Made by a program: the position numbers and the translations under genes
Origin: Klebsormidium nitens
Taxonomy: Eukaryota > Plantae > Klebsormidiophyceae
Direction: 5' to 3'
DNA length: 64,000 nt
Assembly (NCBI GenBank): GCA_000708835.1
Contig: DF236989.1
Location: forward strand, 124,001 to 188,000
Shown: positions 31,001 through 62,600 of the stretch, one piece after another
Layout of the letters: the number at the start of each line of letters is the position of its first letter
How positions within the stretch are numbered: the first letter of the stretch is position 1
The notes under the pieces: model-generated
What the model was told of the DNA's origin: nothing
What the model saw: only the letters and a program-made list of their open reading frames with translations
Databases searched by the model: none

Positions 31001-34000
31001 GGGCTGCAGTCGGTGAAGCAGACTTGGAGGTCGCCATTCTCCATGCAGGTGGCCTGGCCCCGTTCAAAGATGTAGATCACCTGAGGAGGTCGAAAGTGAA
31101 GAGAGTGATGTACTGATGTGTAGAATTGCCACTCAACGTCAATGAGGGTTTAAGCATATGGCGACGTCCCATGGAACGTCAGGAATATTGAAAGCACAGA
31201 AAGAATTCGCGCCCACTTTTGCTAAGAAACAATCCAAATGGACGTTCCTGAAGCGGGGACAGCTTCGAGAAATCTCTTGGCGTTAGTCGCTCTCTTGAAC
31301 TTTAAAAGGGTGACGAAGCAGGAAAAATGGAGCTCTCCTTGCTAATGCCTGCCCCGTTTAACTAACTATCTCGATAATAAGAGAAGCGTTACATTGTCAC
31401 CCGACTCACTTTCGGAGTAGCGCTCGCGACGAGGCCCACAAACGCCGCCGCGTGAGCGTAGTGCATCAGCAGAGCGTCCGGCAGGGCTGGAAATCGGTAC
31501 GTCTTCCCCGGACGTCCAGCCTGCTCCACCTCCACCTCGAGCCCGTCCGTCGACACCGTCAGGACGCTTCCCCCGGGGCCCGTATTGTGGACCTACAAAA
31601 TTAAAAATGGCACTCAGTCTTTAGACCCTGGGTTCCAAAACCGGCCACCGTATGAGCTTTTTAGTGTCCAGCCGGTATGAGACGGGGAGAAAAGCCGAGT
31701 TCCTTGTTCCAAACCTGCAAGTTTGGAATTCCATAATGACTTTGTTTCCCGTTTCTAAAGATCCGACCATCCTACCCTTCACAACTCGGGTTCAACGACT
31801 GGCTTTCCTTGAAGAATTGTTTCGGTTTCACTAGACATAGTTACCGCTGATAAACACCAGTCCGTGGTTGCAGATTGGTTTCTGAGCCAGCTTTCCTCCG
31901 GCCCAACAGCGACCTCTGTAGTCCATTGCGAACTAAGTGGTCGATTCCGGGTCCTTGAAAACATCTCATTTGGTTCCAAAACGGGTTCACCACTGACCTG
32001 CACTCGCCCGTCCTCCAGAATCGCGAGCGACCCGTACGACGTCTCGTGCCGCAGGGCCTTCAGGCGGAGCGTGCTCAGCGGGCGTGTCGGCAGCTGCGTC
32101 GCGCCAGGGGGGCTCCGACTCGGCACCGCGGAGCTTGCTCTTAACCCCCCCGGATCGGAACTCGCGGTCCCGGGCCGTGAACTACTGCCCTGCGGCCTTG
32201 CATCTGAGCCCCGCGATTCGGACGCGTTCTGTTCCGTTCGTCGGTCCGTCCGCCGTTCCGTTCGTACGTCCGTCCGCGGAGCAGTGCCTGCCGAAGCTTC
32301 ATTCCGTGGCGGGCCTGAGGCACGTGACCACAACCGCTCTCCCTCCGGAGTCCTCTCCCGCAAGCCGCTACTCGCCATTCCATGGTCGACCCAAACCCCC
32401 TCGGTTCTCCCGAAACCAGGGTCGCTAAATCCAGTGACCTCCATTCTCCCTGCACTCGCACTACTTTCACTGAGCCCTCTTTGCGTTTCCCGTTGCCCCT
32501 CACTTCTGTGCTCCCGCGGGTGGCTCTGTGCCGGGACTTCGTTCCTGAGGGCCCGCTGCCCGTCCCACTTGCCGCTTCTCTCCACCGCCCCTGACATTTC
32601 GGACTGGTTCAGACCACCTTCGCTCCGATCTTTACGGTTACCTCTCCCCGATCCGCGTTCTTCAACCCTGTCTCCCTCGTACAACCGCTCTGCGCGTTCG
32701 CGTTGCTCCACTGTGTGCAAGCTCTCAGGGGCGAAGTTCGTTCGAGGCGAAGCGGTGCCACTGCGGGTTGCTTGCGAAGCACGATCGCTTTCGCTTTCTG
32801 GAGGGGTTGCTTGCCGTGTCGAAGGGCCGACTAGGAAAGGGTGGGACTGGATGGCGGGGAGGGAGAGTCGCTGGGCAGGGTTCTGCAAGTGAAAAGGTGG
32901 GGAGTCAAGTCAGAAGTTTGCCTGGCCAATGTATCGACGTCCGAGAAATTGCATTCGCGACAAGATCAGAAGAATCGAGTCAGCCAGACTGGAACAAACA
33001 GAAAACCTCAGAAAGAAGGTGCACTAGCTTCGCTAACAGCAGACTCTAAGTGTTCTATAGCCACTCAACTCATCTTTCCGTCAAGAACGGTTCCCTTGCC
33101 TTCATCAAGGCATCATCCTGCTCAAACCTCATCCGGTTTTGACCTAAGAGAAGAATGAAGGACAACCGACATTTGTTCACCTTTTGTAATAGCTGGCTGA
33201 TCAGATCTGCCGCCTCTGCAGGTAGTTGTCGTGGTAGCAGGTAGTCAGCGCACCCAACCCTCTGCAGAGTACCCCTTACAGCATCGCTCTGCACAAAGCA
33301 GTGGACGTATATTAATACCCCGCAAACTCCCAGGTAATCAGCCAAACACAATAATGCGTGGGTTACCCATAGTACGGAGCCGCAATGGCGCAAGCAAAAC
33401 TGAAACTCGGGGGGGTACTCTTTCCATGGCACGTTACAACCTCGAAAGAAAATGCGGATTAATCTTAGTGGATTCTGTTACAAAACGGATCATAAATCTC
33501 CATCTAGGAGGTTGTTCGCTCTTACATCTTTCTTTGATTCAGTTAAGCTCAGAGCAACTCTGCACTGGTGATCTGTAAGGAGCACGACGAGGACAGTGTG
33601 GTGAAAATGGTGCAGCTCAGATCTGAACCAGGCACCTCACCTGAAACGGCGGGGTCCCTGTCAGCAACGTATAGAGCGTCACTCCGAGGGACCACAGGTC
33701 CGCCCCCAGCGAGTACGGCTGCTGCTCGACAATCTCCCTGCACAAGGATCGCGATTTTGAGTCAAGAAACTGCTCAGAGACCAGGATCCACACTATTCTC
33801 GAATTGAGATCTGTGGTAACTGTGGACAAGCAAACGGGCACGTTATGAAAGAAGACTGCTTCATTACACGGATAAGACGAGACTTGGTGCCCTTGCCCTG
33901 TGTTCCGGCCTATTGGATGGACTCCAACGTGGAGCGGGCAGAGGAGAAGGGCCTGACTCACGGGCACATGTAGTTGGGCGTCCCGCAAATGGTCCGCCTC

Positions 34001-41168: not shown

Positions 41169-44100
41169 CTATTGGAAGCGCTCGAAGTATTTTCGGACGT
41201 CTTCCGGACGGCACTTTTGGCCAGGCGGCAGGCTCAGCTTGAGCGCGGCCCCGGCGGGCGCTTTCCCCGAGACGTGCGTCGGGTGGAGCATGCGCGCCAT
41301 TATTTCTACGCCCAGGACCAACCTGAGGAAAAGGACGAGAAGGATGATAAGAATGGAAGCAAGCCTTTCATGATAAGACGTCATGGGATCGACTCGCTAG
41401 CAGACCGAGTCTACCTTAGAAGAACTTGTTACTAGTCCACAGACGATGCGGCAGTGCCGAGAGCAGAAACCCTTCACTGATTCGACAGCAAAGCAGTGCT
41501 ATCTGATGCCTTGATCAATTGGCGCACTAAAGCAACTGAGGAGATTCTACCTGGCCGGAGTGCCTACTTTCAATTGGGCGCAGAAGCGAAAGAATCAGGG
41601 CTTTTATCAACAACAAAAGAACCACAATCTTGAAAGGTAACGGTGATGAGGAAGACGATTTTGCGAATTTAGACGTACCGATGGGAAGGCAGACAACAAA
41701 GACGGAAAAGCGAGAGCTCTCACCTGGGCCCCGGTCGACTGAAAAACGAGTGCTCGCAGATGAAGACCTGCCGGTTTTGGACGGCCGTAAGGTTCCAGAA
41801 GCCCGGACATGATGCCACATACTCGACTTCGGACAACGAACGCTCAGGATTGGAGGAGCAGGGAACCAGGACGAGGACCTCCGGATCGTACTTGATGACC
41901 CGCTCCCACTGCAGCCGCTCCGCGTTGCACCCGGGCTCCTGGGAGGGAGACACGTCAGCACGACGTCAGCAAACGTCAGCATGACGTTAGCAAACGTTTG
42001 CAGACAAACGAGAAAGTTTGACCAGGCGTCTTAGCCGAACCGCTCCCAACGCAGCCGCTCCACGTGGCGCCCAAGCTCCTGGGATGGAGAGACGTCAGCG
42101 TGATGTCAGCAAATGACCGCAGACAACCGAGAAAGTTCGACCGTGTATCTTAGCGAGCGCTCTAACTGCAGCCGCTCTGGGTCGCGCCCTTCTCATGGAA
42201 GAAAGAGACGTCAGCATGACGTCAGCATGTGCCCGTCTGACAGTCGCGGAAAAGTGCAACAGGCGTTCGAGCCAGTAATCATTGACGAAGAATGATGCGC
42301 GCGCCCGATGTGGCTGCTTCGCAAACGACCCTGGCTCCTGACGAAAGCGGACATAACGCTAAACAAAGCTGAGACACATCAGCAGCACACGTCAGCTCCG
42401 ACGATCTCAAGGTGAGAGCGAAGGCTTGGGCGGAGACTATCAGGCACGCCCACTAGAACCGCTCCAAGTGGCACCCTGACTTCAAGTTCTGGGGGGCCAC
42501 GTCAGCGTGACAGCAGCGAGCGGGACCGCACATCAGAAGCTCCAAAACAAAACTCCTCCCCGCAAGCCTGCTCTCGGACGCTTGTAACGAGCAGCCACTC
42601 TTCCGTGCAAGTCCCATCTTACGTTCTCAACGCTCCGGAGATACAATGATGACCTTTTCTTCGCATGGCATTCAGCAAAGCTGTACCTCTTCCCAATGAA
42701 TTTGACCGGAAAAAAGGCATCAAATGATGAAATTCAATGCTCACTTGCAAGCCGTCCACCCCTCCCGCCACGATCCTCATCTCGGGCAGCCACTGCCCCT
42801 TCATATGAAATCCAAAACCACATACTCTCTGCTTTACAACGAACAGTCTTTTGTCAGTTCAAAAAATCATATGTCTGAGTTTGATGCTCACTTGCAAGCC
42901 GTCCACCCCCCCCGCCAAGATCTTCATTTCCGGTAGCCAGTGCCCCCCCAGAACGAGCGGGTGCAGCCCTTCTAGCGACAGCACCCGCGGCCGGTGCGAC
43001 GCCCCAGCCACCGCTCCCGCGACCGCGCGTGATCGCGCCCGGAGTTGCTCTACCAGGGCGCGAGCGGTTGCGGCCGCGCCGACCGCTTCTCCTAGTTTCA
43101 GGATGCTGGCGAAGACGTCGGCCATCTAGACAGGGGGAAAGCAGGTGTTGACAAAATGAAAAAAAACCCGGAGTTTAGGGTCTAAGAAATTTTGCGATTT
43201 GACGGAGCGCTCTGGCCAGCGCACGCGCAACTGGAGCCCTCCAACCGCTTCCCCTAGTTTCAGGTGCTGGCGAAGACGTCGACCATCTGGACGGGAGGTA
43301 ACCGGTGTTCGACAACTTGAAAATAAGAATGCAAATGGTCAGGATTCTTTAAATTGCACGCTCGAAAGGTGCTCTTCCAGTGCGCGAGCGGTCGCGGTTG
43401 CGGCCGCGCCAATCGTGTCTCCCAGCTTTAGGATGCTGGCAAAACGTCGGGCATCTGGACGGGAGGTACCGCGGGTCTTAGCAATTTCAGAATGACTGTG
43501 TTCTCCAAAACAGCACGTTCTGAGAGTGTGTGTAAAAGCTGTTCAATAGCCCACAGATCACCGTCCTTGGTTCCAGCTACACGACGTCGGTCTTTTCGTC
43601 GAGCAGCCCCGCCATGGAAAGAGCGCGCGCGTGCCCCTCTAGCCTAGCATCAACCACTGAGTAACTATCTATTCAGCCAAAGAACGAATCGAAATCAGTC
43701 ACAAAATCCACGACTTACCGTCCTTGGGTCTAGCACCACACTTCGGTCTCCCGTCGAGCAGCCCCGCCGTGGACAGTGTGCGCGCAACCTTTGGCCTAGA
43801 ACGATTTAGAACAGGTAACTGACTGACTAACAAACGAACAAGGTAGCTAAGTGATGACCTAAGTAAGTGACCAGCGAACACTATTGTAACAATCCCCGAC
43901 TCACCGTCCTCGGATCCAAAACCACGACCTCGGTCTTCCCGTCGAGCAGCCCCGCCGTCGAGAGCGCAAGCGCAACCTCGCTCTATTTTGTTTGTTCTTG
44001 TTGTTTCCGACTGGTCTCATTGTTCAATCAATGCATACCCTGGCAAGGGCCCTCAAAACTTAAAGAAGAGCCTAAAACACAGGAATCAAGATTCAAGACT

Positions 44101-47100
44101 CACCGTTCTTGGATCCAGCACGACGACCTCCGTGTCGCCGTCGAGCAGCCCCGCCGTTGAGAGCGCGCGCGCGACCTCGCTCTTGTCGACATCGCACACC
44201 TGGCACGAGTCCTGCGTGACAACTAGATCGGGGCGCTCCCGGGCCAGCCACTCCACGTCCATCTCGAACAGGCTCTCCTTGCGCTCCTTGAGCGTGCGCA
44301 ACTGCACCAAGAATGGGGTTATGGTTTAGGACCTGGGTTAGCGTTGTGGGATTAGCGGTTCTTGTCTTTGATATTCTGGGATTGGGTTCCAACGAGGTCT
44401 CCTTGCGCTCCTTGAGCGCGCGCAATTGCAACGGGAATGGGCTTTGAGTTTTAGGATCTGGGGTTAGCGTTCTCGTCTTTGAAGTTCTGGGGTTAGGATT
44501 CTCAACAGGGTCTCCTTGCGCTCCTTGAATGTGCGTAACTGCACAAGGAATAAGGTGGAGATTTTAGGATCTAGGGTTAGCGTTCTTGTGTGTTTGAGAT
44601 TCTAGGATTCGACTTTCTACACGCTTTTTTTGTGCACCTGGGTGCGTAACTGCACGAGCGCAACGGATGCAGAGCTTGTATTTTTTTCACGTGGGGGCTT
44701 TTGATAAGAATGCGTTGATTTAGGAGAGCCCTTGTTCAAATGGATTTTAGAGGATACCGGAACCGCACTCACAGCTTGAACGGCTTTTGGAAACGTTCCA
44801 AGTGCTTGCAAAGTTTGTTTCATGTAGATGAATCGAAGCGACCTGGCTTTAGAAAGGACGCTACGTGTATGAATCGGCGAAAACGATGGCAACTCAAGAA
44901 TTTCCTGAGCGTAAAAGTGGTCGTTTGCAGAGAAGCAGCACAACAAGATTCGATCCAGACCTTTTGGAATACCATTCAAAACAGGTAACACAATCCGAAG
45001 AAATGTTCCAATCGCCCGGTGTGCCCCGCCTTTGCATCGACCTCCTTGGAGCTCATCGTCGAGCTGTCTTAACGAATTACATTCCAAACTTCCAAGCACC
45101 AGTTGATCGAAAAGACGACAAATTCGGAAACAAAGGAGGAAAAACGACCGCCGCTCGGCGATGAAGCCACAAAGAGATGCCAAGACGAGCGCTGAGTGTA
45201 CCACCTTGGCAACGACCTTTTAAGGGCGCGATACCCTACAACAATGAACAGATGCCCTACAACAATAAACAGATGAACCATAAAGCACTAAACCCTGAAA
45301 CTCTCAAACAATAAAACCATCGGCCTCTAGATCCTGCAACTCTTAAAACTCGGTTCCCACCTTAGCGTCGACCTCCTTGGAGCTCATTTTGGAGCTGTCG
45401 ATTTTGCTTCTGCACACGATGTGCCGCCCCCGGGTGTGCACGCCAGGCGGGAAGTCGCACAGATCCGAGATGCCTATTAGCCTATCGCCTACTCCTGCAA
45501 GGGGGAAACCAGAGAGACGCTTGTTCAGAAGTCTCTTAAGCTTCTGCTTGATTTTGTTTCCATATTTCGAACCCACTTAGATTGTCCTTTCTCGAGGCAC
45601 CTGCCGGAAGGAAAGTCGCACAGGTCCGAGATGCCTATTAGCCATCGCCTACTCCTGCAAGAGGGGCAAGCAAACGGAGGCTTGAAAACTTCGTGAGCTA
45701 TCCCTAACAGATCTTGTAAGGGCAATGTCTCTAGGATCCAATGGAACCTCGCCCTAAAGCACCTGCCCGAGGGGAAGTTGCACAGTCCTAGATGCCGGTA
45801 GCACTGCCTTCTCGTGTGAGAGAGAACAAGGACAAAGATTGGAGCTTCTCAGGCTCGTCCTCACTAGCCCTACGTTACTCCTTGCCTTTCGATAGTGCCC
45901 CGATCAGTCTGCAGGAGAGATACGTTAGCATTGAGTTGTCGCATAAGCTGGGGATGATGGTGAAATCTCGGCCGTTTCGGCATTCCCGGCCGCGTGAAGC
46001 GACTGTGATCCATTTTTATTCTAGCAATACTTCTTTTCCTCTCTGTAACCTGCAAGTCAGCCAGTGATCAGACATTGCCTCACCTAAGTGCATAAGGATC
46101 TCCGTTGCATGCGGCAGCAACGACACGATCTTCACGGGCAACCGCCTCGGCGCCCCGTACACCGTCATCGGACCGTGCCACGTTCCGCTTCCGCCCCACT
46201 CGCGCCCGTTCAACGAACTCCGCGGACTGATTCTATGATACCGTCCCGACGTGCTGGGGGGCCCGAAATCGTCCGAAGAATCGGAGCCCCCCTCGTCGTC
46301 CAACTCCGCCGACGTCCGCAGATGCGACCCGCCGTCCGAGCTCCCGTCCGAGCTGCCACGTGTCCCCTTCAAGGGGGATCCCCGGAGGCCCCCGTTCGAG
46401 AACCCGTTCGTCCACTCGTTGGACGCGGCCCGCGACACCGGTTTCCGCGACCAGTCGACCGACCCGTTTCTCGATATCGACCCCGCGCGCGACATCGGCG
46501 CCGAGTCGACCCGGTAGAGCGGCCCCGAGTCGCTCTCCCGCCGCGCCCAGTCCCAGCTAGAATAGCCCCCCCGGCCGTCCGCATGCCGGCCCGAAGCGTC
46601 CGGATGGCTCGCCCGGGTGTCCGAATGCCTGCCCGGAACGTCCGGAGGGATCCCCCGGCCGTCCGAAAACTCGCGTGAGCTGCGGAGTTCGCGGATCAGG
46701 GGGTCGTGGATCTCGGTCACGATCGGAGCGCTTACGATGGATTTGAGGAGAGCGGGCCCGCCGTTTTCGGACGAATATCGGACGAGTTGGTTGGAGTCGG
46801 ACTCGTTCAGAGCGGCATGCACGGCGGCGGCGGCGGCGGCCCCAGCAGCGGCAGCAGCCTCGGCACCTGGGGGCGAAGTCGAGCTTCGTTTTCAGAAGAA
46901 TCAGAAGTTGATGCACTTCAGCTTAGTCTCTATATCGTTACAGCTGCCTCATCTGACCCAGAGTTGGCGGTGAGCGAATGCAGGACCACCAAGGATCCCC
47001 CATCTGAAACTAAGTAAAAGCGGGTTCGCAGGTCGAAAAGATGAACTGACTGAGATTCCGAAGAACAAGCAGCATCAAGCTACCGCGGAAAGAGTGTCGC

Positions 47101-50100
47101 AAAGAGTGTGAACAAAAGTAGCAAGACGAGAAGCCAAACGGAGACCTCAAAACGGCATCTAAACCAGATCTTTCAGCAACACGAGGAGACAGCGACGTCC
47201 TGCAAGCCCCCGAAAACAACGCAGCCTCAACATCCTGTGTCTTCGCCCACCTGCCGCTGCCACTGCCGAGGCGCTTGCTGCGGCGACCGCCGCCGCTTTT
47301 GACGTGTCCTCCTTGCACTTCTCCACGAACGACGTGGCGGCCCCCGTGTTGCTTCCGAAATGCAGGTGCACGTAGCTCGCCAGCACGTTGCCGATCTGGA
47401 ACCCTTCCAGGATCGGCTCCACTCTGTAAACGAAAAGTGCTTAGGTAAGTTTTTGTCGTTCCTTCCCCAGATGGGTACGCCTTTGGCTTGCTGGTACCTT
47501 GTTAGGAGGCAGATCGAGGACGCTTGGTACGCGCAGGGAAAATGAGGGGTGATCTTTGCTAGCTGGTCAGAGTAGTAGCCGTTGGAATAGAGTGCTTTTC
47601 AGCACATGGGATTGAGTTGCGTCAAATTTTGTTGGGAGACTTTCAGCCGACGTATGCTGCGCAAACGTCCACGGACATAACGGGCAAAATGACACACTAA
47701 AAGTTGCTGAACACAACGAGCTGGCAATTTTCGAAGCCTCTCGAGTCCTGTCAGTGAAACAATGTCGCCACGTCACAATCGCCAGACGGATTACAGAACG
47801 CAGTTCACAATCAGTCCGTCCTTACTCCCGAACACCGATCTCAGGAGTAGATTGCTACAATGGACTGACGGTCAGGCAAGAGTCAGGAAGATTCCGGTAA
47901 AACTTACACGGGGGACTCCCATCACAAACATAACTCCGACCATGAAAAGTACAAAAGATAGACCCGCCCATAGCCCAAAAGCTACCCTCGAGGTTACCAC
48001 ATTGCATGATGCTAATCACTGTCTGGCAAGAACCACGAAAGAAGCGGGTGCACTTAACCTGGGGTACGGCCGTCACAACCGCAAGTCCGAATCTAAAGTG
48101 CACCATGAGAGTGAGCCGACTACGGTTCCCAAAAGCCGACCTTCAGAGCACCTCATAACACCGGAATGATGCAGCCAGGCAACAAATACGAGAGAAACCG
48201 GCAGAACTTACCCGGGGTACTGCAAGCTAACAGTGTAAGCCTGCTCGACGGGCAGAGGCAGCCCCCCCGGGACTGTCATTTTCCCGGGGCTCTCGTCCTC
48301 AATGACCTCGCTAAAGTGGTACACCTGTCCCCGCAGCTCCTTCAAGTGCGCGGGGAAGAGAACGCAGTTGTCCCGCGGCGCCACCTGGCAGCGGAGGATT
48401 GGCTGGGTCAGGATTGCTTTACGACTGGGAGCTTCGACGAAAGGTGCTTATATTATAGAATAGAACAGGGCTACATCGCGCCTTTTCTACCTTCCCTTTC
48501 TGGCTACACATGGGATTCTTTGCAAAACTGATCAAACCTCCCCTTTTCTGCGAAAGAACCTTGGTGATAGCGTTGATTTGGCTTAGCAGGATACAATCGA
48601 CCGTCAATCCTGGCTCCAAGCGGAAACCGCTGGCGTATCCTCAGTCTTCCCTTCAAGCGCTTTGTAACAAATTGCTGGGGTACATCTCAAGCAGCCGATA
48701 GGCAAACCAAACGATGACCGCAGATGCTTTTCTTAGGTTTGGCTAACATTGAGTCTTACAAACCCACCTTGACATAGCCCATCATCATTTTCTGCACCAT
48801 GCGCGTCCAGAACGGGAACACCCCGCACATGGGGTACCGTTCGCCCGCCGTTTCTAGCCCCTGGGAGAGATACATTAGCCCCCCGCACTCTCCGTATATC
48901 ACCCCCCCAGCAGCAGCAAACGCTCGGATCGCGTACAGCATCCGCGTGTTTCCAGCTAGCTGGGGAGCATGCAACTCGGGATAGCCCCCCCCAAAGTAGA
49001 GACCGTCGATGCGTGTCGGAAGGGCGTCGGTCAGGGGGGAAAAGTACACGAGCTGGGCCCCCGCCGCTGCAACAGAGATAAGAATGATGGGTATAAGCAA
49101 TGCGCTGACGACACACACCATGTGGCTGACATCACGGGCATGGGCGTCAAGAATCTAACATCGTATGTTTCTATAGCAGGGAATGTTGATTCCCGCACGA
49201 GCTTTTTCATGTCCTTGGCAAAGAAACACTAAGGTTCTAAGTCACAAAACACTGCTTCGTACCGCTTCGATCAACCAGGAACCAAAGGTCTGCCACTGTG
49301 AGATGCACTTGCACAAGACACGTTTCTGGTCTGTTCGAGCGATTCACCCAAAACATACACCACGCCTCTCTCTACACTCTATAGTCAACTCTGTAGTCAA
49401 CCAAACCCCAACTATAACCCACAGTGACACCATCTTGATCTCTCACCTTGCAAGAGAGCCAGGTTCTCGTGGTAGTAGAAGCAAAACGCGTCGTCCCGTG
49501 CGACGCCAATCCGGACCATTTTTGACGGCGACGGCAGGAGGGGCGGCAGCCCATTTGCAGGAGCGAACGTTGGGCTCTCAGGGTCGCCGTTGCTGACATC
49601 AGCGCTAACGTCAGTGCTCGTGGGCGAGCGCGCCTCGACGGTGCCCGCCAGCTGGAGGATCGCGTCGAGGTCGACGTGCTTTTCTAGCAGGTCGGCGAGC
49701 TTTTCTATGTGGTCGATGGGGACCCCCTCCTCGCCTGGTTAGGAATATGGTCAAGAACATGGTTATAGACTGGGTCAGAGATATAACCCCAAGTCCAGAC
49801 TTACCACGATGCAACTCCATTTGGCCGCTTGGGACCCCTTCGTCGCCTGGTCAGGAATGAGATCAAGAAACGGCTTGAATAAACGAGATGCAGGTCAAGT
49901 GGTCAAGAGCGTGGTTAAGAAGTGGGTCAGGGGGGAGTACTCCGAGTTGGGTTTCACCGGCAGGAAGGTTTGACATGGCTAGGTGGGCAAGTGTTTTCAC
50001 AGCAAACGGATAAGATGCAATCAGAGTAATAGACTGATGTTCATCGACCGGCAGCAGATATATTGACCTGGCCAAGATAGACTAGGTTGTCAACAGGGAC

Positions 50101-53035
50101 AAACATACCTACGATATTCTGCACTATGACCTTCAGAAGACGCCCTGGCCATTGTCTGATCATCAAACCTGACTCGAAAGGCGGCTCACATTGGAGGCGC
50201 ACATAAAGCAGAGGTATGGTAAACCAGAAAATCCAGCACAAGGAAGGACCCGCTCGATAATCACCTGAGTGGTCGTTTACAGCGCCCCTTCCAAGTTGAA
50301 CGACCATGACAAAGACACATTTATATGGTATATGCCATTTTTGTTTCAAGTATTTCTTGGAGGATGCTTCAAAATCCCCCACTCTTTCTACAATCATAAC
50401 TGAAGATCCTTGACACTGCGCAGAACCTCTCATTTATTAACCTTCAAGGCGCCTAAGCACTCTCGTAGCACCCAGACCTCCAAAACCCCCTCTATAACCT
50501 TCCTCCATCTCTGAGACTTCCCCAAACCCCGCAAGGTTTCCAGTTAAATACCTCACTCCTCCTCCTGATCAAACCCTCAGAAAATCACCAGACGAGTCCA
50601 AATATCTTACCCGGCATGTGCAGCCCAAGGTGCCTTTCAGGGAGCACAAGCTCCGGAACCTTCGGGACGCCACCCAGCACTGTTGCGGTGACGTCAGCGG
50701 CCTCAACCGCATCCTTCAGCCACGTCGTGTGTGCATCGCTTCCCACCTGAAAAGGCGAGGCCGCAGCTTAGAATTGCCACCCTGATTGGCCCCCACTGAA
50801 ACAGACAGCTGGCAAACGCTTTGGTCGAGTGCCCCAGCACTGTCGAGTGCCCCGGCACCTCCTTTTGAGTTTTATTCCCCCAACAACTGACGGCTACTTA
50901 TCAGTGCAGCTCCTGGTTCTACTGATATATTGGCTCCAGCAAGGACGAGCTTCTCGACCAACGCTGCATTTACTGTCGTTTCTTCAAGCGCCCATCGTAC
51001 GCTGCTTTCTGCTCCCTTCTGAATTCGGAACCCAAAACCCTAATGGGGTGGACGACGCACTCAATCGCCGCCCTCCGGAATGCATGAGGCCCTGAATTCC
51101 TCTTTTCAGGGTAACTTGCATTGCGTTGCCCTGCTGCCAATCGCAACGTTCTGGAACGTACTGCCCAATCTCCAATCTAAAGATTCCCCAGCTCTCTCTT
51201 TGGCCCATATACTAGTCTAGCTTCCACTGGTTGTGCATTCAGTCCGCTCTGCTTGTTCAAAGTCCATTCAAACTCTGTCAGACACATTCTAAGAGTAATA
51301 TCAAACATTTTGTACCAGGCAACGAGCGCCCTTCTGCAACCGCAGCTCCTAAGAGTAATATCAAACATTTTGTACCAGGCAACGAGCGCCCTTCTGCAAC
51401 CGCAACTCATTCTGTCAAAGACAACATTTACAATATCGAATGCTTCCAATCTGACTTGAAAGCCTCCGCCAAATCGCCACCCAAGCTCAGGACTCGTGTG
51501 CCCGCAGCCCCAGATGCAGACAAGCTGCCCCTCACCTTGTTGAAAACCACGCCGGCGAAATCGAGTGCAGGGTCAAACGTCATGTAGCCGTGAATGATTG
51601 CCGCGGCGCTCCGCGCAAGCGCCCAGCAGTCCAGAACCAGCACGACCGGCGCGCCAATGATTTTTGCCATCTCAGCGGTACTCCCCGACTCCGTCTTCCC
51701 GTCCCGCCCGTCAAACAAACCCATGACGCCCTCCACAATGGCTATGTCTGTGTCCGGAACACACCGAGAAAAGCACGCAAGATTCGTTTCCCGGTCAAGC
51801 ATCCAGCCGTCGAGGTTCAATGAGTCGCGACCCGTTGCAGCCCTGTGGTGCATCGGGTCTAGGAAATCTGCGAAGCAACAGGTGGCAGAGGGGTTCAGTG
51901 CGGGCGACGACAGGTGTCAAATGACATGGTGTCAATGCAAGGGGCAACCGGTGTCAATGTGATTGCAACAGCTGTCAATGCAACCTGCGCATAAGATGCG
52001 GGCAGAAAGCTTGATGCTAGTGGTGACAGCTGTCAAACTCATGCCAGCTGTCCTCGAGGTGAGATATCAGGGCGACAGGTGTCAAGCATCTAAATGAGGA
52101 CGTGCTTGCAGCTATCGGCCGGCCAGTTCAAAGAAAAGCTGTTCCACAGAAGCATGAAAGAGGAGAACTAAAAGTCAGGTGGACGAGGGGCTTCACGACA
52201 AAATCCCTCAATTGGTGCAAAATTTAGACAAAAGCAGAGTTCCCTGAGCTTGAGCTCGCCACCGTGTGAAACCCTTTCTTCCCTCTTTGGGCAGATTGTT
52301 ATGTAAGATCTACAGCTAGCATTGACGATAACAAAGCTGCTCAACCATCACTTCAGGTCTGTCTCAAAGACAAGGGCCCGTGTTCAACGTGGTAAACTCA
52401 TGCAGAAAAGTAGACAGATGCAAAAGTGGTGGTCTTATTGAGCTGCACTGGGCACTTGGTGCATTCTTCTTGCAAGAATTAGACTTCCTTCCTCCAATGC
52501 AATCCAGATTTCCAGATCTACACTGCGAGCAGACCACAGCCAGCCTGTCATGCAAAATGACAATCTTCTGCTATGTCAGTTGTTTCCCAGCTGTAGCAAT
52601 AGCTATGCCAGTACACCCAGCTCCATCCTCAAACCAGACAGAGAGCTAGAGCCTCCCTTTCCCCAATTGCCTCGTTCGACTCCCTAGATACGCTCTCGAC
52701 CATTACCAACTTCAACCGTGCCGTAGCTTGCAAGTCTTCTTACCAGGCCCCACTTTGAACGGCTGCACACGCAGGCCCCTCCTCCGATAGGCGGCCATCA
52801 GCCCGACGGCAATTGACGTCTTCCCTACCCCACTCTGAGTCCCCCCAACAACGATTACTTTCATTGCGCCACGCCCCGGGCTCGCTGCCATGGAGATGAG
52901 TCGCTTATCCCCGGAATCCATCGAGTCCCTCGTCCCCAACTTTAACGACGGGTCCAGCCCCGGCATCTCTTCCGAGGCGCAAACTAGAGCCGCGGTGCAG
53001 GCCCTGCTGCTGGCTTCGAGGGCAATCGGAGCCAT
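41169..53035 (-). CDS. cbiA: Cobyrinate a,c-diamide synthase-like (CbiA/CobB amidoligase + GATase) fused to a BtuF/Fe-chelate-type substrate-binding domain (13 exons, ~1136 aa)
   Basis: Exons 53035-52744, 51867-51536, 50746-50611, 49734-49447, 49066-48768, 48384-48212, 47423-47251, 46866-46084, 45494-45361, 44301-44104, 43125-42892, 41938-41724 and 41322-41169 total 3411 nt, and all 12 GT-AG junctions are in phase. CbiA motifs: [76 protein letters not shown]. Binding-protein motifs: [70 protein letters not shown]. Confidence 0.92.
41950..42520 (-). repeat. Echo copies of the exon-12 acceptor and head, plus an acgtcagc/gctgacgt motif array
   Basis: Copies of gcagccgctc...ctcctggga...gagacgtcagc at ~42025-42110 and ~42145-42230, with a weaker one at ~42455-42510. 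Four CTRAC motifs lie at 41953-41995 on the minus strand. Confidence 0.8.
42735..44660 (-). repeat. Echo copies flanking exons 10 and 11 of the cbiA fusion gene
   Basis: Exon-11 tail copy at ~42735-42810 and head copies at ~43225-43290 and ~43380-43462. Exon-10 tail copies with donor at ~43557-43632, ~43714-43800 and ~43898-43985. Exon-10 head copies at ~44395-44430, ~44508-44545 and ~44630-44660. Confidence 0.9.
45035..45810 (-). repeat. Echo copies flanking exon 9 of the cbiA fusion gene
   Basis: Tail fragment tcgacctccttggagctcat at ~45037-45056. Head copies (aagtcgcacag..ccgagatgcctattagcc..tcgcctactcctgcaag) at ~45600-45665, with a weaker one at ~45765-45810. Confidence 0.85.
51289..51408. 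repeat. Near-perfect 60-bp tandem duplication in intron 2 of the cbiA fusion gene
   Basis: ctaagagtaatatcaaacattttgtaccaggcaacgagcgcccttctgcaaccgca(g/a)ctc occurs twice with a single mismatch. Confidence 0.95.
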
Positions 53036-59601: not shown

Positions 59602-62600
59602 ATGGCAAACATGTAAGCAATGAGCGCAAGTAATCCCCCTGACCTCCAGCACCTTAGCTTTACCTTGCAGACGTTCTACAGAGGCAATGCTGTGAAGCCT
59701 AAAGCTTCGGATGGGCAGCAAACGTTGAAAGCTTGCTGAATGGGAGTTCCACCCACTGGAGAGCTCAGCTAGACTTGCACAACCAACAGTCTGACTACTG
59801 GCACCATGTATATTTCACCTGATCAACAGTCCCCATCAGCATGTTTTTCGATTCATTGTCGTGTGTCTCACAAGCTTTTAGCAAATTGAAGCTGACTCCA
59901 AGTCTTAAGCCTCTGGCTTTGTGATCGCCGCAAATCAGGGCATAACCACCAACCGCTTACTGCTGACGTCATTCTGACCTGTGTTCAGCACGTTCGACCT
60001 GCAATGGCGGGAGGCCATGACGGACCTGCTGGAGCAACTAGAGGCGGAGGCTCCGGAGGACCCCGCTCTGGCCCCGCAGGTAAAGTCACCATCTGCGCTA
60101 CTTCTTTCCGACCCTGCTCTTATCTCGTCAAAGCGGGTTGTTTTATGGGGCCCCTCTTTCTTGCAATCAAGGGTACGAGTTCGATGAAAGGTCGTTTGAA
60201 GAAGGTTTGTTGACGGATGCATGAACATGTAGATGCTGAATTTTGACCTCCTTTGACGTTCAATGAGCTTAGATGCACGCCTTTTCCACAGGAGCAGCCA
60301 GCTTGAAACAGTTGCTTGAAGTTTGGACATGGTAATGGGCAGTCATTGGCATGCCAGCTCGTTACATCCTCGTCAAAGTCCCCTATGGACTTGCCGCTGT
60401 GTGGTTACGGTCAATACGGGCTTAACTGGATCGAGGATGCGTGCAGCAATCCCGCCAAAGACAGAAACTCTGTTCCGTACCCTGCAATTATATCTGTTGA
60501 AGAGCTCGGACTCGATGCTTTGTGCGAGTGGCAGCAAGGAAGGACCGCTCGTGCAATAGTAAATACACACGATGCGCAGAGCAAGGAAGTACGAAGTTAG
60601 GAAGAATGTGGAGAACGATTTTGGGTCAGAAGGCATTAGCGCCCTGACGGATACTGGGAGCAGGGTATCAGCAAATCACGTCGAGACTCACTAAAAGTAA
60701 AGTGAGCCGGCAATCAAGAAACCACTTATGGGCCGCTGTTACAGAAAAAACAGTCAATCTGACGCAGATGGATAACGATGATCGATTGCCTGCACAGCGG
60801 CGTGGGCAGTTTTACTTTCTGGACGATAAGAAGACAGTGTAGAGACGGTCGACATGCCTCAGCTGCTGATGGAATTGGGCTGTTGAGAAGCTTGAGGGAG
60901 GACAGAAGAAAAGACGCAGGAAGGGACGGATAGAGCAACAATGAAACGGGGCAGGGGGAGAAAAGATTTTGGACGGCGAAGGAACAGCAGGGGAAGGAAA
61001 AGAACGACTTCACAATATCAAATATAGGATGAAACGGAGTTTCTTGATTAGAAAGGAAACGTCGTTGTCTGACTGGCAAATTGCAATGCAAAAGCTCAAT
61101 TCGTGTCCTGTTGTAACGCTGGCCTCTCCCTTCCCCGCAGACGCTCACCGACTACGCGTGCATGTACATCAAGTACTTGCAGATCTACAACAAGCTGGAG
61201 GAGTCGTACGACCAGGTAACGAGCACACATGTTGTTCCTTGCTCGCGCAAGTCCCCATGATTTTTGTCTAGATGCTTGAATGCATTTTCGCATATGGTTA
61301 TGAAGTTCTGAGGCGCTGCCCAAAATCTTCCGAACACACTCGTAGACAATTCTTTGGTTCGTATTTTAACCTTTGGTCCTAGACTCTGTCCAAACTTACG
61401 ATTTGTTGAAGGCGATTGTGACCCCGGAGTCAGGCTTTTTGGTTCCGCAGATGGTGCATCCCCAGAAAAGGCTGGACCTGAAGAAAGCGCTGGAGGCGTG
61501 CATCGGGCGGCTACTGGAGGTGAAAGCGGTACGTTCCAGACGGACCCCTATCTTGCCAACGCATCCAAACCGTTGAGAACTTCACACAGCATAACGAAAA
61601 GACAAAACGACGGCACCCTTTGAGCTAGAGTGAGTGGAAGACGTGGGGTGTGTGACTCAGCGACTGGTTGGTAACTCCAGGAGAAGACTGTTGCTCGTTC
61701 TAATCGAGCCTGTCGAAATGTTTACGTTGACAGCCACTTCTTTAGGATCGTTAGCGCGTTTGTCAAGTCGGACCTTCGCCCAAACGCTGTCGTGATACCA
61801 AAGGCGACCAATGAGAGAAAGAACGAAACTATTATCATCTCCAATCTTACAACTCCCAAAATGGTTGTGCTAAAGGAACGACCTTGAAGCTCAGACTTCG
61901 GTCCATACAGTCCTAGAATTTGAAAACGTACATATCGAAGAAAACCTTCAACGCGAAAACCTAGAATTCGCCCCTTCTTCGCCCAGTGGCTGGTGACACT
62001 GAACGACGGACGCGACGTGGTCAATCTGGACGACACCCTGGTGGACCTGAAGCTGGGTCCGGACGTCCTGGAGGTCCGGGTGCCCCGGTACTACCGGAAC
62101 GACCGGGCAGTAGAACTGGAGAGCCGCCAGCAATTCTTGGTGAGGGCACTGGTTTCAAAATTTTAATTTGAGGGTTAGGCGCTCCTGCTAAGGTGTCCCC
62201 TGATGAGGGCAGCGGTTTAAAGCTTTTGGGTTAGGAGCGTTGAACGCTCCGGGTACCTGAGAGTTCCCCGGTAGTACCGGAACGACCGGGCGGCTGAAGT
62301 GGAGAATCGGCAGCACTTCCTGATGAGGGCAGCGGTTACAACTTTTCAATTTGAAGCTTGGTTCGGGCTCTTCCGATATTCCGAAACAGTGGATCTGGAG
62401 AGCTGGCAGCATTCCTGGTAAGGGCGCTTTTGCGTTGGAACTTCAAAAAGGAGTCCGGGGTGGACAATTTGGAAGCCTCACGGGTGCTGGAATCTGTACG
62501 AGCGGTTGGACTAGAAAACGCAGAGACCTTTTCAATCTCTCGAGTATCCCTGTCTTCTTGCTTTCAACTAAAGACTCTGAAGAGGCCATATGATCCTTGT

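What the first reader, a model, noticed from the sequence alone, without database searches (positions are those of the whole stretch)
41169..53035. Intron-containing eukaryotic CbiA/CobB fused to a BtuF-like corrinoid-binding domain: candidate undescribed corrinoid/tetrapyrrole salvage system
Seen in sequence: 13 exons join in phase into one ~1136-aa ORF containing a full CbiA amidoligase, a class-I GATase with its nucleophile Cys (YGECGG), a linker, and a complete helical-backbone substrate-binding domain. The binding domain has no signal peptide of its own. Established: CbiA/CobB amidates the a and c side chains of (hydrogeno)cobyrinate in prokaryotic B12 synthesis, its paralogue CfbB does the same on Ni-sirohydrochlorin in F430 synthesis, BtuF-type proteins bind corrinoids for ABC import, and de novo B12 synthesis is known only from prokaryotes. 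Inference: a gene of bacterial origin has been domesticated, and an importer subunit has been repurposed as an intracellular substrate-capture or sensor module. It could repair or remodel scavenged incomplete corrinoids, or amidate another metal tetrapyrrole such as siroheme. I do not know of a characterised protein with this architecture, but I could not run a search.
Basis: partly seen in the sequence, partly recalled or inferred. Interest (0 to 1): 0.9.

Follow-up and report, generated by a model that had tools for sequence, protein, structure and literature searches.

The report
Algal CobB enzyme fused to BtuF-like domain
This intron-rich algal nuclear gene really does encode a bacterial-type vitamin-B12-pathway amidating enzyme joined to a B12/haem-binding-type domain; the fusion is old, is shared by many algae, water moulds and early land plants, and has never been studied, so it may be an unrecognised step in how eukaryotes handle B12-like molecules.

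Summary
Thirteen GT-AG exons on the minus strand (53035..41169) join in phase into a 1136-aa protein: a CobB/CbiA a,c-diamide synthase with its GATase_3 glutaminase, a roughly 250-aa disordered linker, and a signal-less Peripla_BP_2 domain.

The gene is not unique. The same fusion is already in public databases, auto-annotated, for streptophyte algae, liverworts, mosses, lycophytes and chlorophytes. Oomycetes and dinoflagellates carry it with Kelch and DUF5522 added. I found no functional study.

The enzyme half falls among bacterial cobyrinate a,c-diamide synthases and keeps 80 of 83 of their conserved positions. The binding half descends from a bacterial family that already lacked a signal peptide and carries a four-cysteine signature. 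In 9 of 80 bacterial loci that family sits in B12 loci, next to cobalamin riboswitches, btuB or cobUTS.

Algal and protist members, including this window, keep the glutaminase cysteine and the four cysteines. All ten members of the embryophyte clade have lost at least one. Named land plants in that clade belong to groups reported to have lost B12 metabolism.

Best reading (about 45%): a cytosolic corrinoid-capturing amidoligase. A siroheme-type substrate is a weaker rival. The gene is a new variant of a known enzyme kind and of moderately high interest.

The parts
52744..53035 (-). Exon 1 (aa 1-97). It holds a possible 57-aa N-terminal extension, then the P-loop [10 protein letters not shown] (K72, T73). 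The true start may be M58 at 52864.
   Evidence: Orthologues start within 25 residues of the P-loop.
51536..51867 (-). Exon 2 (aa 98-208). Synthetase core with the GPDFLDP motif (D98, D101), E143 and D150.
   Evidence: tblastn gives 68-78% identity at E down to 1e-53. The conserved columns are listed.
50611..50746 (-). Exon 3 (aa 209-253). End of the synthetase domain (ERHLGL).
49447..49734 (-). Exon 4 (aa 254-349). Inter-domain segment and start of GATase_3 ([15 protein letters not shown]).
48768..49066 (-). Exon 5 (aa 350-449). GATase_3 core with the nucleophile C410 in [10 protein letters not shown].
   Evidence: Pfam GATase_3 at E 1e-20. A search with this exon alone gave 1803 relatives at E<=1e-10.
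48212..48384 (-). Exon 6 (aa 450-506). GATase_3, continued. An alternative in-phase acceptor at 48402 cannot be excluded.
47251..47423 (-). Exon 7 (aa 507-564). End of GATase_3 (SYVHLHFGS with H526 and H528), then the Ala-rich start of the linker.
   Evidence: The donor is CAG|GTGGGC at 47251.
46084..46866 (-). Exon 8 (aa 565-825). Low-complexity Ser/Ala/Gly/Arg linker, then the first strand and helix of the PBP domain ([16 protein letters not shown]).
   Evidence: In the AF2 model of the orthologue the linker is disordered.
45361..45494 (-). Exon 9 (aa 826-870). PBP N-lobe with C838 in the CDFP motif.
44104..44301 (-). Exon 10 (aa 871-936). PBP N-lobe with C903 and C906 in QDSCQVCD.
42892..43125 (-). 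Exon 11 (aa 937-1014). Backbone helix and start of the C-lobe, with the GGHWLPEM motif.
41724..41938 (-). Exon 12 (aa 1015-1085). PBP C-lobe with C1041 (VPCSS) and FFSRPGPR.
   Evidence: Pfam Peripla_BP_2 at E 9e-5 on this exon alone.
41169..41322 (-). Exon 13 (aa 1086-1136 plus stop). Last helix of the PBP domain and the conserved tail [16 protein letters not shown].
   Evidence: The tail is not DUF5522 by Pfam.
41897..45684 (.). Degenerate tandem copies (70-89% identity, 124-542 nt apart) of the ends of exons 9-12, lying in the neighbouring introns. Several keep a donor-like GGTGAGT. They are decoy or pseudo-exon pieces and are not part of the coding model.
   Evidence: Orthologue-guided tblastn always picks the copies used in the model.

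Best explanation
The gene encodes a cytosolic, catalytically competent, glutamine- and ATP-dependent tetrapyrrole a,c-diamide synthase of the bacterial CbiA/CobB type. A flexible linker tethers it to a cytoplasmic BtuF-class binding domain.

**Proposed mechanism**
1. The C-terminal domain captures an imported corrinoid in its inter-lobe cleft. The four conserved cysteines (C838, C903, C906, C1041) probably lie in that cleft, either ligating the metal centre or holding a metal or Fe-S site.
2. It presents the corrinoid to the N-terminal enzyme.
3. The enzyme hydrolyses glutamine at C410, activates the a and c acetate carboxylates with ATP at the P-loop and Asp/Glu site, and amidates them.

The likely purpose is salvage or repair of incompletely amidated or deamidated corrinoids in eukaryotes that use vitamin B12 but cannot make it.

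**Shown:** gene structure, domain identity, intact catalytic residues, absence of a signal peptide, family distribution, the bacterial B12-locus context of the binding-domain family, and loss of key residues in the embryophyte-clade copies.

**Inferred:** the corrinoid ligand, the position and role of the cysteines, hand-off between the domains, cytosolic location and the physiological purpose.
For: **Enzyme half**
- NCBIfam CobB equivalog NF002204 scores 361-469 bits on orthologues (cut-off 254). CfbB scores stay below its 560-bit cut-off.
- It is 45-52% identical to bacterial proteins that their sources name cobyrinate a,c-diamide synthase, including cyanobacterial ones.
- In the tree the eukaryotic clade sits among bacterial CbiA/CobB.
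- The window keeps 80 of 83 columns that are >=92% conserved in 24 bacterial enzymes, including K72, D98, D101, E143, C410, H526 and H528.

**Binding half**
- Profile and fold searches hit BtuF and haem PBPs. 5ysc scores E 1e-19. The AF2 model has pLDDT 91 and matches E. coli BtuF at TM 0.85 normalised to the target.
- The nearest relatives are signal-less bacterial proteins about 40% identical with the same motifs.
- 8 of 80 bacterial loci have a cobalamin riboswitch within 3.2 kb, and none was found elsewhere in the 10-kb flanks. In L008 and L011 the order is riboswitch, TonB receptor, this gene. In L017 it directly follows cobU-cobT-cobS.

**Distribution**
- The CbiA and PBP trees each give one eukaryotic group with matching subgroups, which fits one old fusion.
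- C410 and all four PBP cysteines are kept in this window and in 19 of the 25 other algal and protist members. None of the 10 embryophyte-clade members keeps all five.
- B12-dependent metabolism is reported lost in mosses and vascular plants and probably in liverworts (PMC11439496).
- Orthologues start at the P-loop with no transit peptide.
Against: - No eukaryote is known to have CobQ, CbiB or other enzymes that would use cobyrinate a,c-diamide, so the natural substrate is undefined. From general B12 chemistry, the acetamide a and c groups are the more hydrolysis-resistant amides of B12.
- The gene persists as a long open reading frame in mosses, liverworts and lycophytes without known B12 enzymes. 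Marchantia and Physcomitrium keep C410.
- Only about 10% of bacterial homologue loci show a B12 context. Across the 80 loci no neighbour is conserved.
- Sequence and fold do not separate a corrinoid from a haem ligand.
- Full-length AF2 gives pTM 0.58, so no confident docking between the domains.
- No expression or transcript data exist for this genome.
Confidence: 0.45

Rival explanations
1. A siroheme or isobacteriochlorin amidase that works like DsrN or CfbB. The enzyme would amidate the a and c acetates of sirohydrochlorin or siroheme, the only C2/C7-methylated tetrapyrroles eukaryotes make themselves. The fused domain would hold that tetrapyrrole.
For: Family members DsrN (siroheme amide) and CfbB (Ni-sirohydrochlorin) show that isobacteriochlorin substrates are possible (PMC10504309). 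CfbB HMM scores are high (315-397 bits), though below the cut-off. The PBP fold matches haem-binding PBPs as well as it matches BtuF. The gene persists in mosses and lycophytes, which lack B12 enzymes but, from general knowledge, have siroheme enzymes. Chlorophyte members have N-terminal extensions of 100-280 aa that could be transit peptides.
Against: Saprolegnia parasitica lost nitrite and sulfite reductase (PMC3681718) but keeps a copy with every catalytic residue and cysteine. The enzyme clade is nested among bacterial CbiA/CobB, whereas DsrN and CfbB are reported to derive from the archaeal branch. Streptophyte, oomycete and chytrid proteins have no transit peptide although, from general knowledge, plant siroheme synthesis is plastidial. 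The bacterial context of the PBP family points to B12, not siroheme. From general knowledge, seed plants need siroheme, yet none appeared among the hits.
Confidence: 0.17
2. A tetrapyrrole sensor, chaperone or storage protein in which catalysis is secondary or lost. The fused domains would bind a corrinoid or haem and signal or deliver it; in oomycetes and dinoflagellates this might work through the added Kelch and DUF5522 modules.
For: Several land-plant members lack the glutaminase nucleophile (Riccia G, Selaginella A, Diphasiastrum S) yet remain long conserved ORFs. Oomycete and dinoflagellate versions add Kelch repeats and a Cys-rich DUF5522. The bacterial stand-alone homologues have no enzyme partner nearby.
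Against: In this window and in most algal and protist members every catalytic residue of both the synthetase and the glutaminase is conserved, 80 of 83 columns in the window. That is the pattern of an active enzyme under purifying selection.
Confidence: 0.12
3. The enzyme acts on an unknown, non-corrin and non-siroheme carboxylate substrate, for example an undiscovered eukaryotic tetrapyrrole or bilin derivative. The four-cysteine PBP domain would be a metal or Fe-S module rather than a tetrapyrrole binder.
For: The four-cysteine signature is absent from characterised BtuF and haem PBPs and from the ordinary btuF of L085. No NCBIfam equivalog fits the domain. In 71 of the 80 bacterial loci no B12-related neighbour was detected. 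The eukaryotic clade carries a substitution, H to Q469.
Against: The substrate-side motifs of CbiA (PDFLDP, E143 and others) are unchanged. The riboswitch and cob-gene contexts recur in four phyla.
Confidence: 0.15
4. These are two separate genes, a CobB gene ending after exon 7 and a PBP gene starting in exon 8, or a decaying pseudogene that the in-phase model only appears to join.
For: There are no transcript data for this genome. If the donor at 47251 is not used, the exon 7 frame runs on to a stop at 47161. Exon 8 begins in low-complexity sequence. Closterium and Chara database models contain only the CobB part. Decoy splice sites from exon-end duplications crowd introns 8-11.
Against: All 12 introns have GT-AG borders with good consensus and correct phase, and no exon has an internal stop. 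More than 30 relatives from four eukaryotic supergroups are single fused proteins, some from transcriptome assemblies. Both halves keep all functional residues. The trees of the two halves have matching subgroups.
Confidence: 0.04

Closest known systems
CbiA / CobB, the (hydrogeno)cobyrinate a,c-diamide synthases of bacterial B12 synthesis
   Same: Same two-domain enzyme: a DTBS-like P-loop synthetase plus a GATase_3 triad glutaminase. It scores above the CobB equivalog cut-off, is 45-52% identical, keeps 80 of 83 conserved columns, and is nested among the bacterial enzymes in the tree.
   Different: It is encoded in a eukaryotic nucleus with 12 introns, in organisms without the rest of the corrin pathway. 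It is fused to a C-terminal PBP-like domain through a disordered linker. It carries the eukaryote-clade substitution H to Q469. The substrate is unknown.
DsrN (siroheme amidase of dissimilatory sulfite reductase systems) and CfbB (Ni-sirohydrochlorin a,c-diamide synthase of F430 synthesis)
   Same: Homologous amidoligases that act on the acetate side chains of a tetrapyrrole. They show that the family can switch macrocycle (PMC10504309).
   Different: CfbB model scores stay below its cut-off (315-397 against 560). DsrN and CfbB are reported to come from the archaeal branch, whereas this clade sits with bacterial CbiA/CobB. Neither is fused to a PBP domain. An intact copy exists in Saprolegnia, which lacks siroheme enzymes.
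BtuF, the periplasmic vitamin B12-binding protein of the BtuCD importer
   Same: Same class III helical-backbone fold (TM 0.82-0.85 normalised to BtuF). Shared motifs at the first strand (SLxPsxTE), D-Y/F-P and GHW (Vibrio BtuF). Profile E 1e-19 to 5ysc.
   Different: It has no signal peptide and no transporter partner. It has a four-cysteine signature that was absent from the one ordinary btuF examined (L085). It scores far below the BtuF equivalog cut-off (about 30 against 234 bits). About 80 extra residues include an insertion after strand 2 and a conserved C-terminal tail.
Haem-binding PBPs (ShuT, PhuT, HmuT, BhuT, RhuT) and 4m7o
   Same: They match by fold and profile as well as BtuF does (TM 0.75-0.82; E 1e-24 to 1e-11).
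   Different: They are periplasmic proteins that bind haem. I could not test whether the residues they use to ligate haem have counterparts here.
Uncharacterised bacterial signal-less 'cobalamin-binding protein / iron complex substrate-binding protein' family (about 300 aa; Nitrospirota, Acidobacteriota, Actinomycetota, Proteobacteria and others)
   Same: The true closest relatives of the C-terminal domain: 35-45% identity over the full length, the same start at the first strand, the same CD[YF]P, CxxC, PC[GS], GHW and FSRPGPRLVDG motifs. Part of the family lies in B12 loci.
   Different: They are stand-alone proteins, never found next to or fused with CbiA in the 80 loci. Their function is also unknown.
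CBA1 and the CblB/C/D/J trafficking proteins (the known eukaryotic B12 handling set)
   Same: If the best explanation holds, this protein belongs to the same physiological process and has a similar phyletic pattern: algae yes, seed plants no.
   Different: There is no sequence relationship. This family was not among the 13 proteins surveyed in PMC11439496. It would be the only one that chemically modifies the corrin periphery.

Membership tests
CbiA/CobB a,c-diamide synthase | Full-length match to curated family models above their cut-offs | tested here: met
   On orthologues (the spliced window protein could not be submitted): NF002204 scores 361-469 bits (cut-off 254) and TIGR00379 scores 317-415 bits (cut-off 261). 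Window exons hit CbiA and GATase_3 in Pfam.
CbiA/CobB a,c-diamide synthase | P-loop, acidic synthetase-site residues, and the Cys/His glutaminase residues | tested here: met
   K72, T73, D98, D101, D117, E143, D150, N207, E409, C410, H526 and H528 are all present. In total 80 of 83 conserved bacterial columns are identical.
CbiA/CobB a,c-diamide synthase | Phylogenetic placement within bacterial CbiA/CobB | tested here: met
   The eukaryotic clade (SH-aLRT 98) lies inside bacterial sequences named cobyrinate a,c-diamide synthase, on a quick tree rooted on actinobacterial CobBC.
CbiA/CobB a,c-diamide synthase | Amidates (hydrogeno)cobyrinate within a B12 biosynthetic pathway | not testable with these tools
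   This needs enzymology. From general knowledge the host lineage lacks the rest of the pathway, so pathway membership is doubtful even if the chemistry is the same.
CfbB (Ni-sirohydrochlorin a,c-diamide synthase) | Score above the NF033195 cut-off of 560 bits | tested here: not met
   Orthologues score 315-397 bits.
DsrN (siroheme amidase) | Co-occurrence with DsrAB or with siroheme-dependent reductases | tested here: not met
   Eukaryotes have no Dsr system. S. parasitica lacks nitrite and sulfite reductase yet has an intact copy. No DsrN model or sequence was available for a direct comparison.
BtuF (vitamin B12 ABC-transporter substrate-binding protein) | Class III helical-backbone PBP fold | tested here: met
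   The AF2 model has pLDDT 91. Foldseek against 1n4a gives TM 0.85 normalised to the target and rmsd 3.0; against 5ysc E is 1.6e-15.
BtuF (vitamin B12 ABC-transporter substrate-binding protein) | Signal peptide or periplasmic location, and a BtuCD partner | tested here: not met
   The domain is internal to a cytosolic-type protein. The bacterial relatives start MRICSLLPSATE. FecCD is nearby in only 6 of 80 loci.
BtuF (vitamin B12 ABC-transporter substrate-binding protein) | Score above the BtuF equivalog NF002894 cut-off of 234 bits | tested here: not met
   Scores are 26-37 bits.
BtuF (vitamin B12 ABC-transporter substrate-binding protein) | Binds cobalamin or other corrinoids | not testable with these tools
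   The only support is indirect: cobalamin riboswitch, btuB or cobUTS neighbourhood in 9 of 80 bacterial homologue loci.
Eukaryotic CobB-PBP fusion family (database-only, uncharacterised) | Single polypeptide with CbiA + GATase_3 + Peripla_BP_2 in that order, and orthology in both halves | tested here: met
   The model is collinear with Marchantia, Riccia, Physcomitrium, Spirogloea and Chlorokybus proteins. Both domain trees place the window inside the streptophyte group and outside the embryophyte clade.

The most novel reading that the evidence does not exclude
Eukaryotes that depend on scavenged vitamin B12 perform a corrin-ring chemistry step themselves. A cytosolic enzyme with its own corrinoid-capture domain would (re)amidate the a and c side chains, turning environmental incomplete or damaged corrinoids into usable ones. 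The ancestral stand-alone four-cysteine domain would be a previously unrecognised cytoplasmic corrinoid-handling protein of bacteria. The fusion would then be a missing component of algal B12 salvage, and its decay in land plants would be a molecular trace of their exit from B12 metabolism.
Probability: 0.35. Interest if true: 0.8.

Novelty: new variant of a known kind. Interest (0 to 1): 0.62.

Why it matters
More than half of algal species need bacterial B12, and which corrinoid forms they can use shapes aquatic productivity. The known eukaryotic toolkit covers uptake, trafficking and lower-ligand remodelling. It contains no enzyme that acts on the corrin ring periphery.

A conserved, catalytically intact CobB with a built-in binding domain was absent from the most recent 13-protein survey of plant and algal B12 metabolism. 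It would add such an enzyme and give a concrete, testable candidate.

The analysis also exposes a widespread bacterial family of signal-less BtuF-like proteins with a four-cysteine site that sits in riboswitch-controlled B12 loci and has no assigned role. If the substrate turns out not to be a corrinoid, the gene would instead point to an unknown amidated tetrapyrrole in eukaryotes.

Tried and rejected
- **Submitting the spliced protein.** The 1136-aa protein could not go to the database tools because there is no reference for a spliced product. I used exon pieces and orthologue ids instead, and handled the model itself only in scripts.
- **Conserved operon partner.** All-against-all clustering of ORFs in 80 bacterial loci found none, apart from antisense ORFs over the gene itself. 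No locus contained a CbiA.
- **Bacterial version of the fusion.** The only candidate, P0182 on L085, has an internal signal peptide, lacks the cysteine signature and is 21% identical to the eukaryotic domain. It is an ordinary btuF joined to cbiA on one contig, and I rejected it as the source of the eukaryotic fusion.
- **Metagenome proteins that looked bacterial.** P0174 and P0168 lie on eukaryotic contigs, next to Pex2/Pex12, frataxin, importin and TBP.
- **DUF5522 in the streptophyte tail.** Not found.
- **Rfam and tRNA scans of the window.** Nothing found, and no riboswitch near the gene.
- **Full-length AF2 for inter-domain docking.** Inconclusive at pTM 0.58. The tool gives no coordinates, so the geometry of the four cysteines could not be measured.
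- **PDB sequence search for the enzyme half.** No solved relative.
- **Literature.** The only mention found was a passing note of a CobB-like transcript in a haptophyte (PMC4057078). One search was uninformative because of how I combined the terms.
- **Flagellated-gamete distribution idea.** Rejected from general knowledge, because zygnematophytes have the gene and no flagella.
- **Source species.** I could not identify it. The trees only place it as a non-embryophyte streptophyte closest to Closterium (67% identity).


Full report

Yes. Open stretches on the minus strand between 53089 and 41172 carry recognisable CobB, GATase and PBP peptides. I searched for in-phase GT..AG pairs around the homology blocks.

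The joined CDS is 3411 nt, encoding 1136 aa, with a single terminal stop. Full-length relatives from Riccia, Diphasiastrum, Physcomitrium and Spirogloea align collinearly to the exons. Each gives 11-13 tblastn segments with E-values down to 1e-53. The best overall relatives are 52-63% identical.

On single exons Pfam finds CbiA, GATase_3 and Peripla_BP_2. The neighbouring genes are ordinary eukaryotic ones: 6-phosphogluconate dehydrogenase, pirin, eIF3j and a PA-domain protein. The window has no tRNA or Rfam hit. Bacterial contamination is therefore excluded.

Two things remain unverified: the transcript itself, and the start codon. M58 at 52864 matches where orthologues begin. The 57-aa extension from M1 is not conserved.

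**2. It is a member of a conserved eukaryotic family.**

An exhaustive HMMER search with exon 5 alone returned many proteins of 900-1160 aa. Most of those I scanned carry CbiA + GATase_3 + Peripla_BP_2.

A search with the Riccia protein named the family members:
- mosses: Physcomitrium and Ceratodon;
- lycophytes: Selaginella and Diphasiastrum;
- streptophyte algae: Spirogloea, Chlorokybus, Mesotaenium and Chara;
- chlorophytes: Chloropicon and Monoraphidium;
- oomycetes (Saprolegnia, Aphanomyces) and the dinoflagellate Prorocentrum, which add Kelch repeats and a Cys-rich DUF5522.

One search added Closterium, Trebouxia and a chytrid, whose database models contain the CobB part only. Two long metagenome members that might have been bacterial lie on eukaryotic contigs.

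In the tree of the CobB half, all 35 eukaryotic sequences form one clade (SH-aLRT 98). The tree of the PBP half gives one eukaryotic group with the same three subgroups: streptophyte, chlorophyte, and the Kelch type. This is what one old fusion followed by co-inheritance would produce. Both are quick trees, and the bacterial sister group of the CobB half is unresolved.

The window protein lies inside the streptophytes. It is outside the 100%-supported embryophyte clade and nearest to Closterium (67% identity). The source is therefore a streptophyte alga.

Literature searches found no functional work. The only trace is a passing mention of a CobB-like transcript in a haptophyte. The family is absent from the 13-protein survey of plant and algal B12 metabolism and from other B12 papers I checked.

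**3. The enzyme half.**

Orthologues score 361-469 bits on the NCBIfam CobB equivalog (cut-off 254). They stay below the CfbB cut-off, at 315-397 against 560 bits. They are 45-52% identical to bacterial proteins that their sources name cobyrinate a,c-diamide synthase, including cyanobacterial, acidobacterial and melainabacterial ones.

Of 83 alignment columns that are at least 92% conserved in 24 bacterial enzymes, the window protein matches 80. These include:
- the P-loop (G69, G71, K72, T73);
- the PDFLDP aspartates (D98, D101);
- E143, D150 and N207;
- the glutaminase E409-C410;
- H526 and H528.

One of the three differences, H to Q469, is shared by most eukaryotic members. This is the pattern of an active enzyme with an unchanged substrate site. 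No solved structure of the family exists by sequence search.

**4. The binding half.**

A profile of 25 eukaryotic domains hits class III PBPs: 4m7o (E 2e-24), Vibrio BtuF 5ysc (1e-19), ShuT (2e-15), other haem binders and E. coli BtuF. The AF2 model (pLDDT 91, pTM 0.91) superposes on E. coli BtuF at TM 0.85 and on haem PBPs at 0.75-0.82. It fits siderophore binders less well. 'Tetrapyrrole-type PBP' is therefore supported, while 'BtuF' specifically is not.

The key new point concerns its closest relatives. These are hundreds of bacterial proteins of about 300 aa, 35-45% identical over their whole length. They begin directly at the first strand (MRICSLLPSATEI...), which means they have no signal peptide.

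These proteins share a signature with the eukaryotic domain: C in CD[YF]P, a CxxC after the fourth strand, C in PC[GS], plus GHW and FSRPGPRLVDG. In this fold all four cysteines follow strand ends, and strand ends line the inter-lobe cleft. Their position in the cleft is an inference, because no coordinates were available.

So the 'importer subunit turned intracellular' step happened in bacteria, before the fusion. The nearest bacterial sequences (P0204, P0206) group with the eukaryotic domains at 99% support.

**5. What the bacterial relatives say about the ligand.**

Across 80 loci from many phyla there is no conserved neighbour and no CbiA. A minority of loci are nevertheless telling:
- L008 and L011 (Nitrospirota): cobalamin riboswitch, then a TonB-dependent receptor, then this gene, all on one strand, with btuF- and btuC-like genes further downstream.
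- L017: the gene directly follows cobU-cobT-cobS, with cobA and a bluB-like gene upstream.
- L016: it sits between a periplasmic btuF and btuCD, beside a riboswitch-btuB unit and cobUTS.
- L015 and L028: it is divergent from a riboswitch-btuB unit.
- L051, L079 and L070: a cobalamin or AdoCbl riboswitch lies 90-900 nt downstream.

All nine riboswitch hits, in eight loci, lie within 3.2 kb of the gene, although 10 kb was scanned on each side. The loci come from four phyla. This is independent support, from a minority of loci, that the family handles corrinoids.

One bacterial product, P0182, does join CbiA to a PBP inside a cobU-cobT-cobS-cobC-[fusion]-cobA operon. However, its PBP part has its own signal peptide and no cysteine signature, and it is only 21% identical to the eukaryotic domain. 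It is an ordinary btuF, seen on a single contig. It shows that cbiA and btuF can be neighbours, not that the eukaryotic fusion pre-exists in bacteria.

**6. Distribution and decay.**

I tabulated C410 and the four PBP cysteines across 36 family members. The window and 19 of 25 other algal or protist proteins keep all five residues, and this group includes both Saprolegnia species and Aphanomyces.

None of the ten embryophyte-clade proteins keeps all five:
- Riccia has C410G and has also lost three PBP cysteines.
- Marchantia has lost three PBP cysteines.
- The two mosses have C1041R.
- Diphasiastrum has C410S and has lost three more.
- Selaginella has C410A and H526R.
- Two further embryophyte-clade members of unknown species are also incomplete.

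At least four of these losses are independent. The synthetase residues mostly persist.

Dorrell et al. report B12-dependent metabolism lost in mosses and vascular plants and probably in liverworts, but retained in hornworts and streptophyte algae (PMC11439496). The decay therefore tracks the loss of B12 use. This turns the presence of the gene in mosses from a flat contradiction of a B12 role into partial support. It remains a caveat, because the land-plant genes are still long conserved ORFs.

For the siroheme alternative the test goes the other way. S. parasitica has lost nitrite and sulfite reductase (PMC3681718) yet keeps a fully intact copy.

**7. Mechanism.**

The best-supported reading has three parts. 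The C-terminal domain binds a corrinoid in the cytosol. The flexible linker, disordered in the AF2 model, lets the domain present its ligand to the CobB active site. There, ammonia released from glutamine at C410 amidates the ATP-activated a and c carboxylates.

The chemistry is inferred from homology. The ligand is inferred from bacterial gene context and from the distribution of intact copies. Hand-off between domains and the role of the cysteines are hypotheses. Full-length AF2 gave pTM 0.58, so it provides no evidence for a fixed docking.

The main weakness is the natural substrate. From general knowledge, no eukaryote has the downstream enzymes needed to use cobyrinate a,c-diamide, and the a and c amides of B12 are chemically robust. 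I put this reading at about 45%. The rivals are a siroheme or isobacteriochlorin amidase (about 17%), an unknown substrate (about 15%), a mainly non-catalytic sensor or chaperone (about 12%), and two genes or a pseudogene (about 4%).

**8. Novelty.**

The gene is a new member of a family that databases already hold but nobody has characterised. Measured against characterised systems, it is a new variant of the CobB/CbiA kind. It is eukaryotic, it is fused to a cytoplasmic four-cysteine PBP-like domain, and it works outside a B12 synthesis pathway. Because the architecture is widespread and catalogued, and its function is still inferred, I score it 0.62.

Noticed in passing
window 41897-45684 and 49704-49869: The ends of exons 9-12, and the 5' end of exon 4, each have 1-3 degenerate tandem copies (70-89% identity, 112-542 nt apart) in the adjoining intron. 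Several keep a donor-like GGTGAGT. It looks as if the introns grew by repeated duplication of exon-intron junctions, creating decoy splice sites.
   Followed up: partly
window 2281-4651, 6146-6326, 24288-26072, 28806-28993, 62080-62354: The same kind of local degenerate tandem duplication (periods about 80-515 nt, 68-87% identity) occurs in other parts of the window, so it may be a general habit of this genome rather than of this gene.
   Followed up: no
L008, L011, L015, L016, L017, L028, L051, L070, L079 (bacterial loci): An uncharacterised bacterial family of signal-less, four-cysteine BtuF-like proteins lies in cobalamin-riboswitch, btuB, btuFCD or cobUTS loci in Nitrospirota, Proteobacteria, Chloroflexota and Actinomycetota. 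It is a candidate cytoplasmic corrinoid-handling protein in its own right.
   Followed up: partly
L085:3302-5584: A bacterial cob operon (cobU-cobT-cobS-cobC-X-cobA) in which cbiA and a btuF that has its own signal peptide are called as one 760-aa product. This could be a real read-through fusion or a sequencing or assembly artefact. It is seen on a single contig.
   Followed up: partly
P0164, P0166, P0167, P0170-P0172, P0177-P0179, P0086 (oomycete, dinoflagellate and unnamed relatives): In these lineages a C-terminal DUF5522 with a CCGxxCRHCPxGH motif follows the CobB-PBP core, and most of them also carry Kelch repeats. The streptophyte tail (GQxCxPxxLxxHF) is different and matches no Pfam family.
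   Followed up: partly
L084:11280-11672: The bacterial stand-alone PBP closest to the eukaryotic domain (P0206) is followed by a Flavin_Reduct (PF01613) gene. From memory, that family includes the corrin reductase CobR. This is a single instance with no riboswitch nearby.
   Followed up: no
window 28594-32892: A GC-rich block (about 60% GC) holds very long low-complexity ORFs on the minus strand (828 aa and 369 aa), with long ORFs on the opposite strand over the same stretch. None has a Pfam match.
   Followed up: no
window aa 469 of the model (exon 6, about 48327): The His of the bacterial G-H-x-F-H motif is Gln in the window and in 23 of 34 eukaryotic members. It is a clade-specific change in an otherwise unchanged enzyme, and its meaning is unknown.
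   Followed up: no
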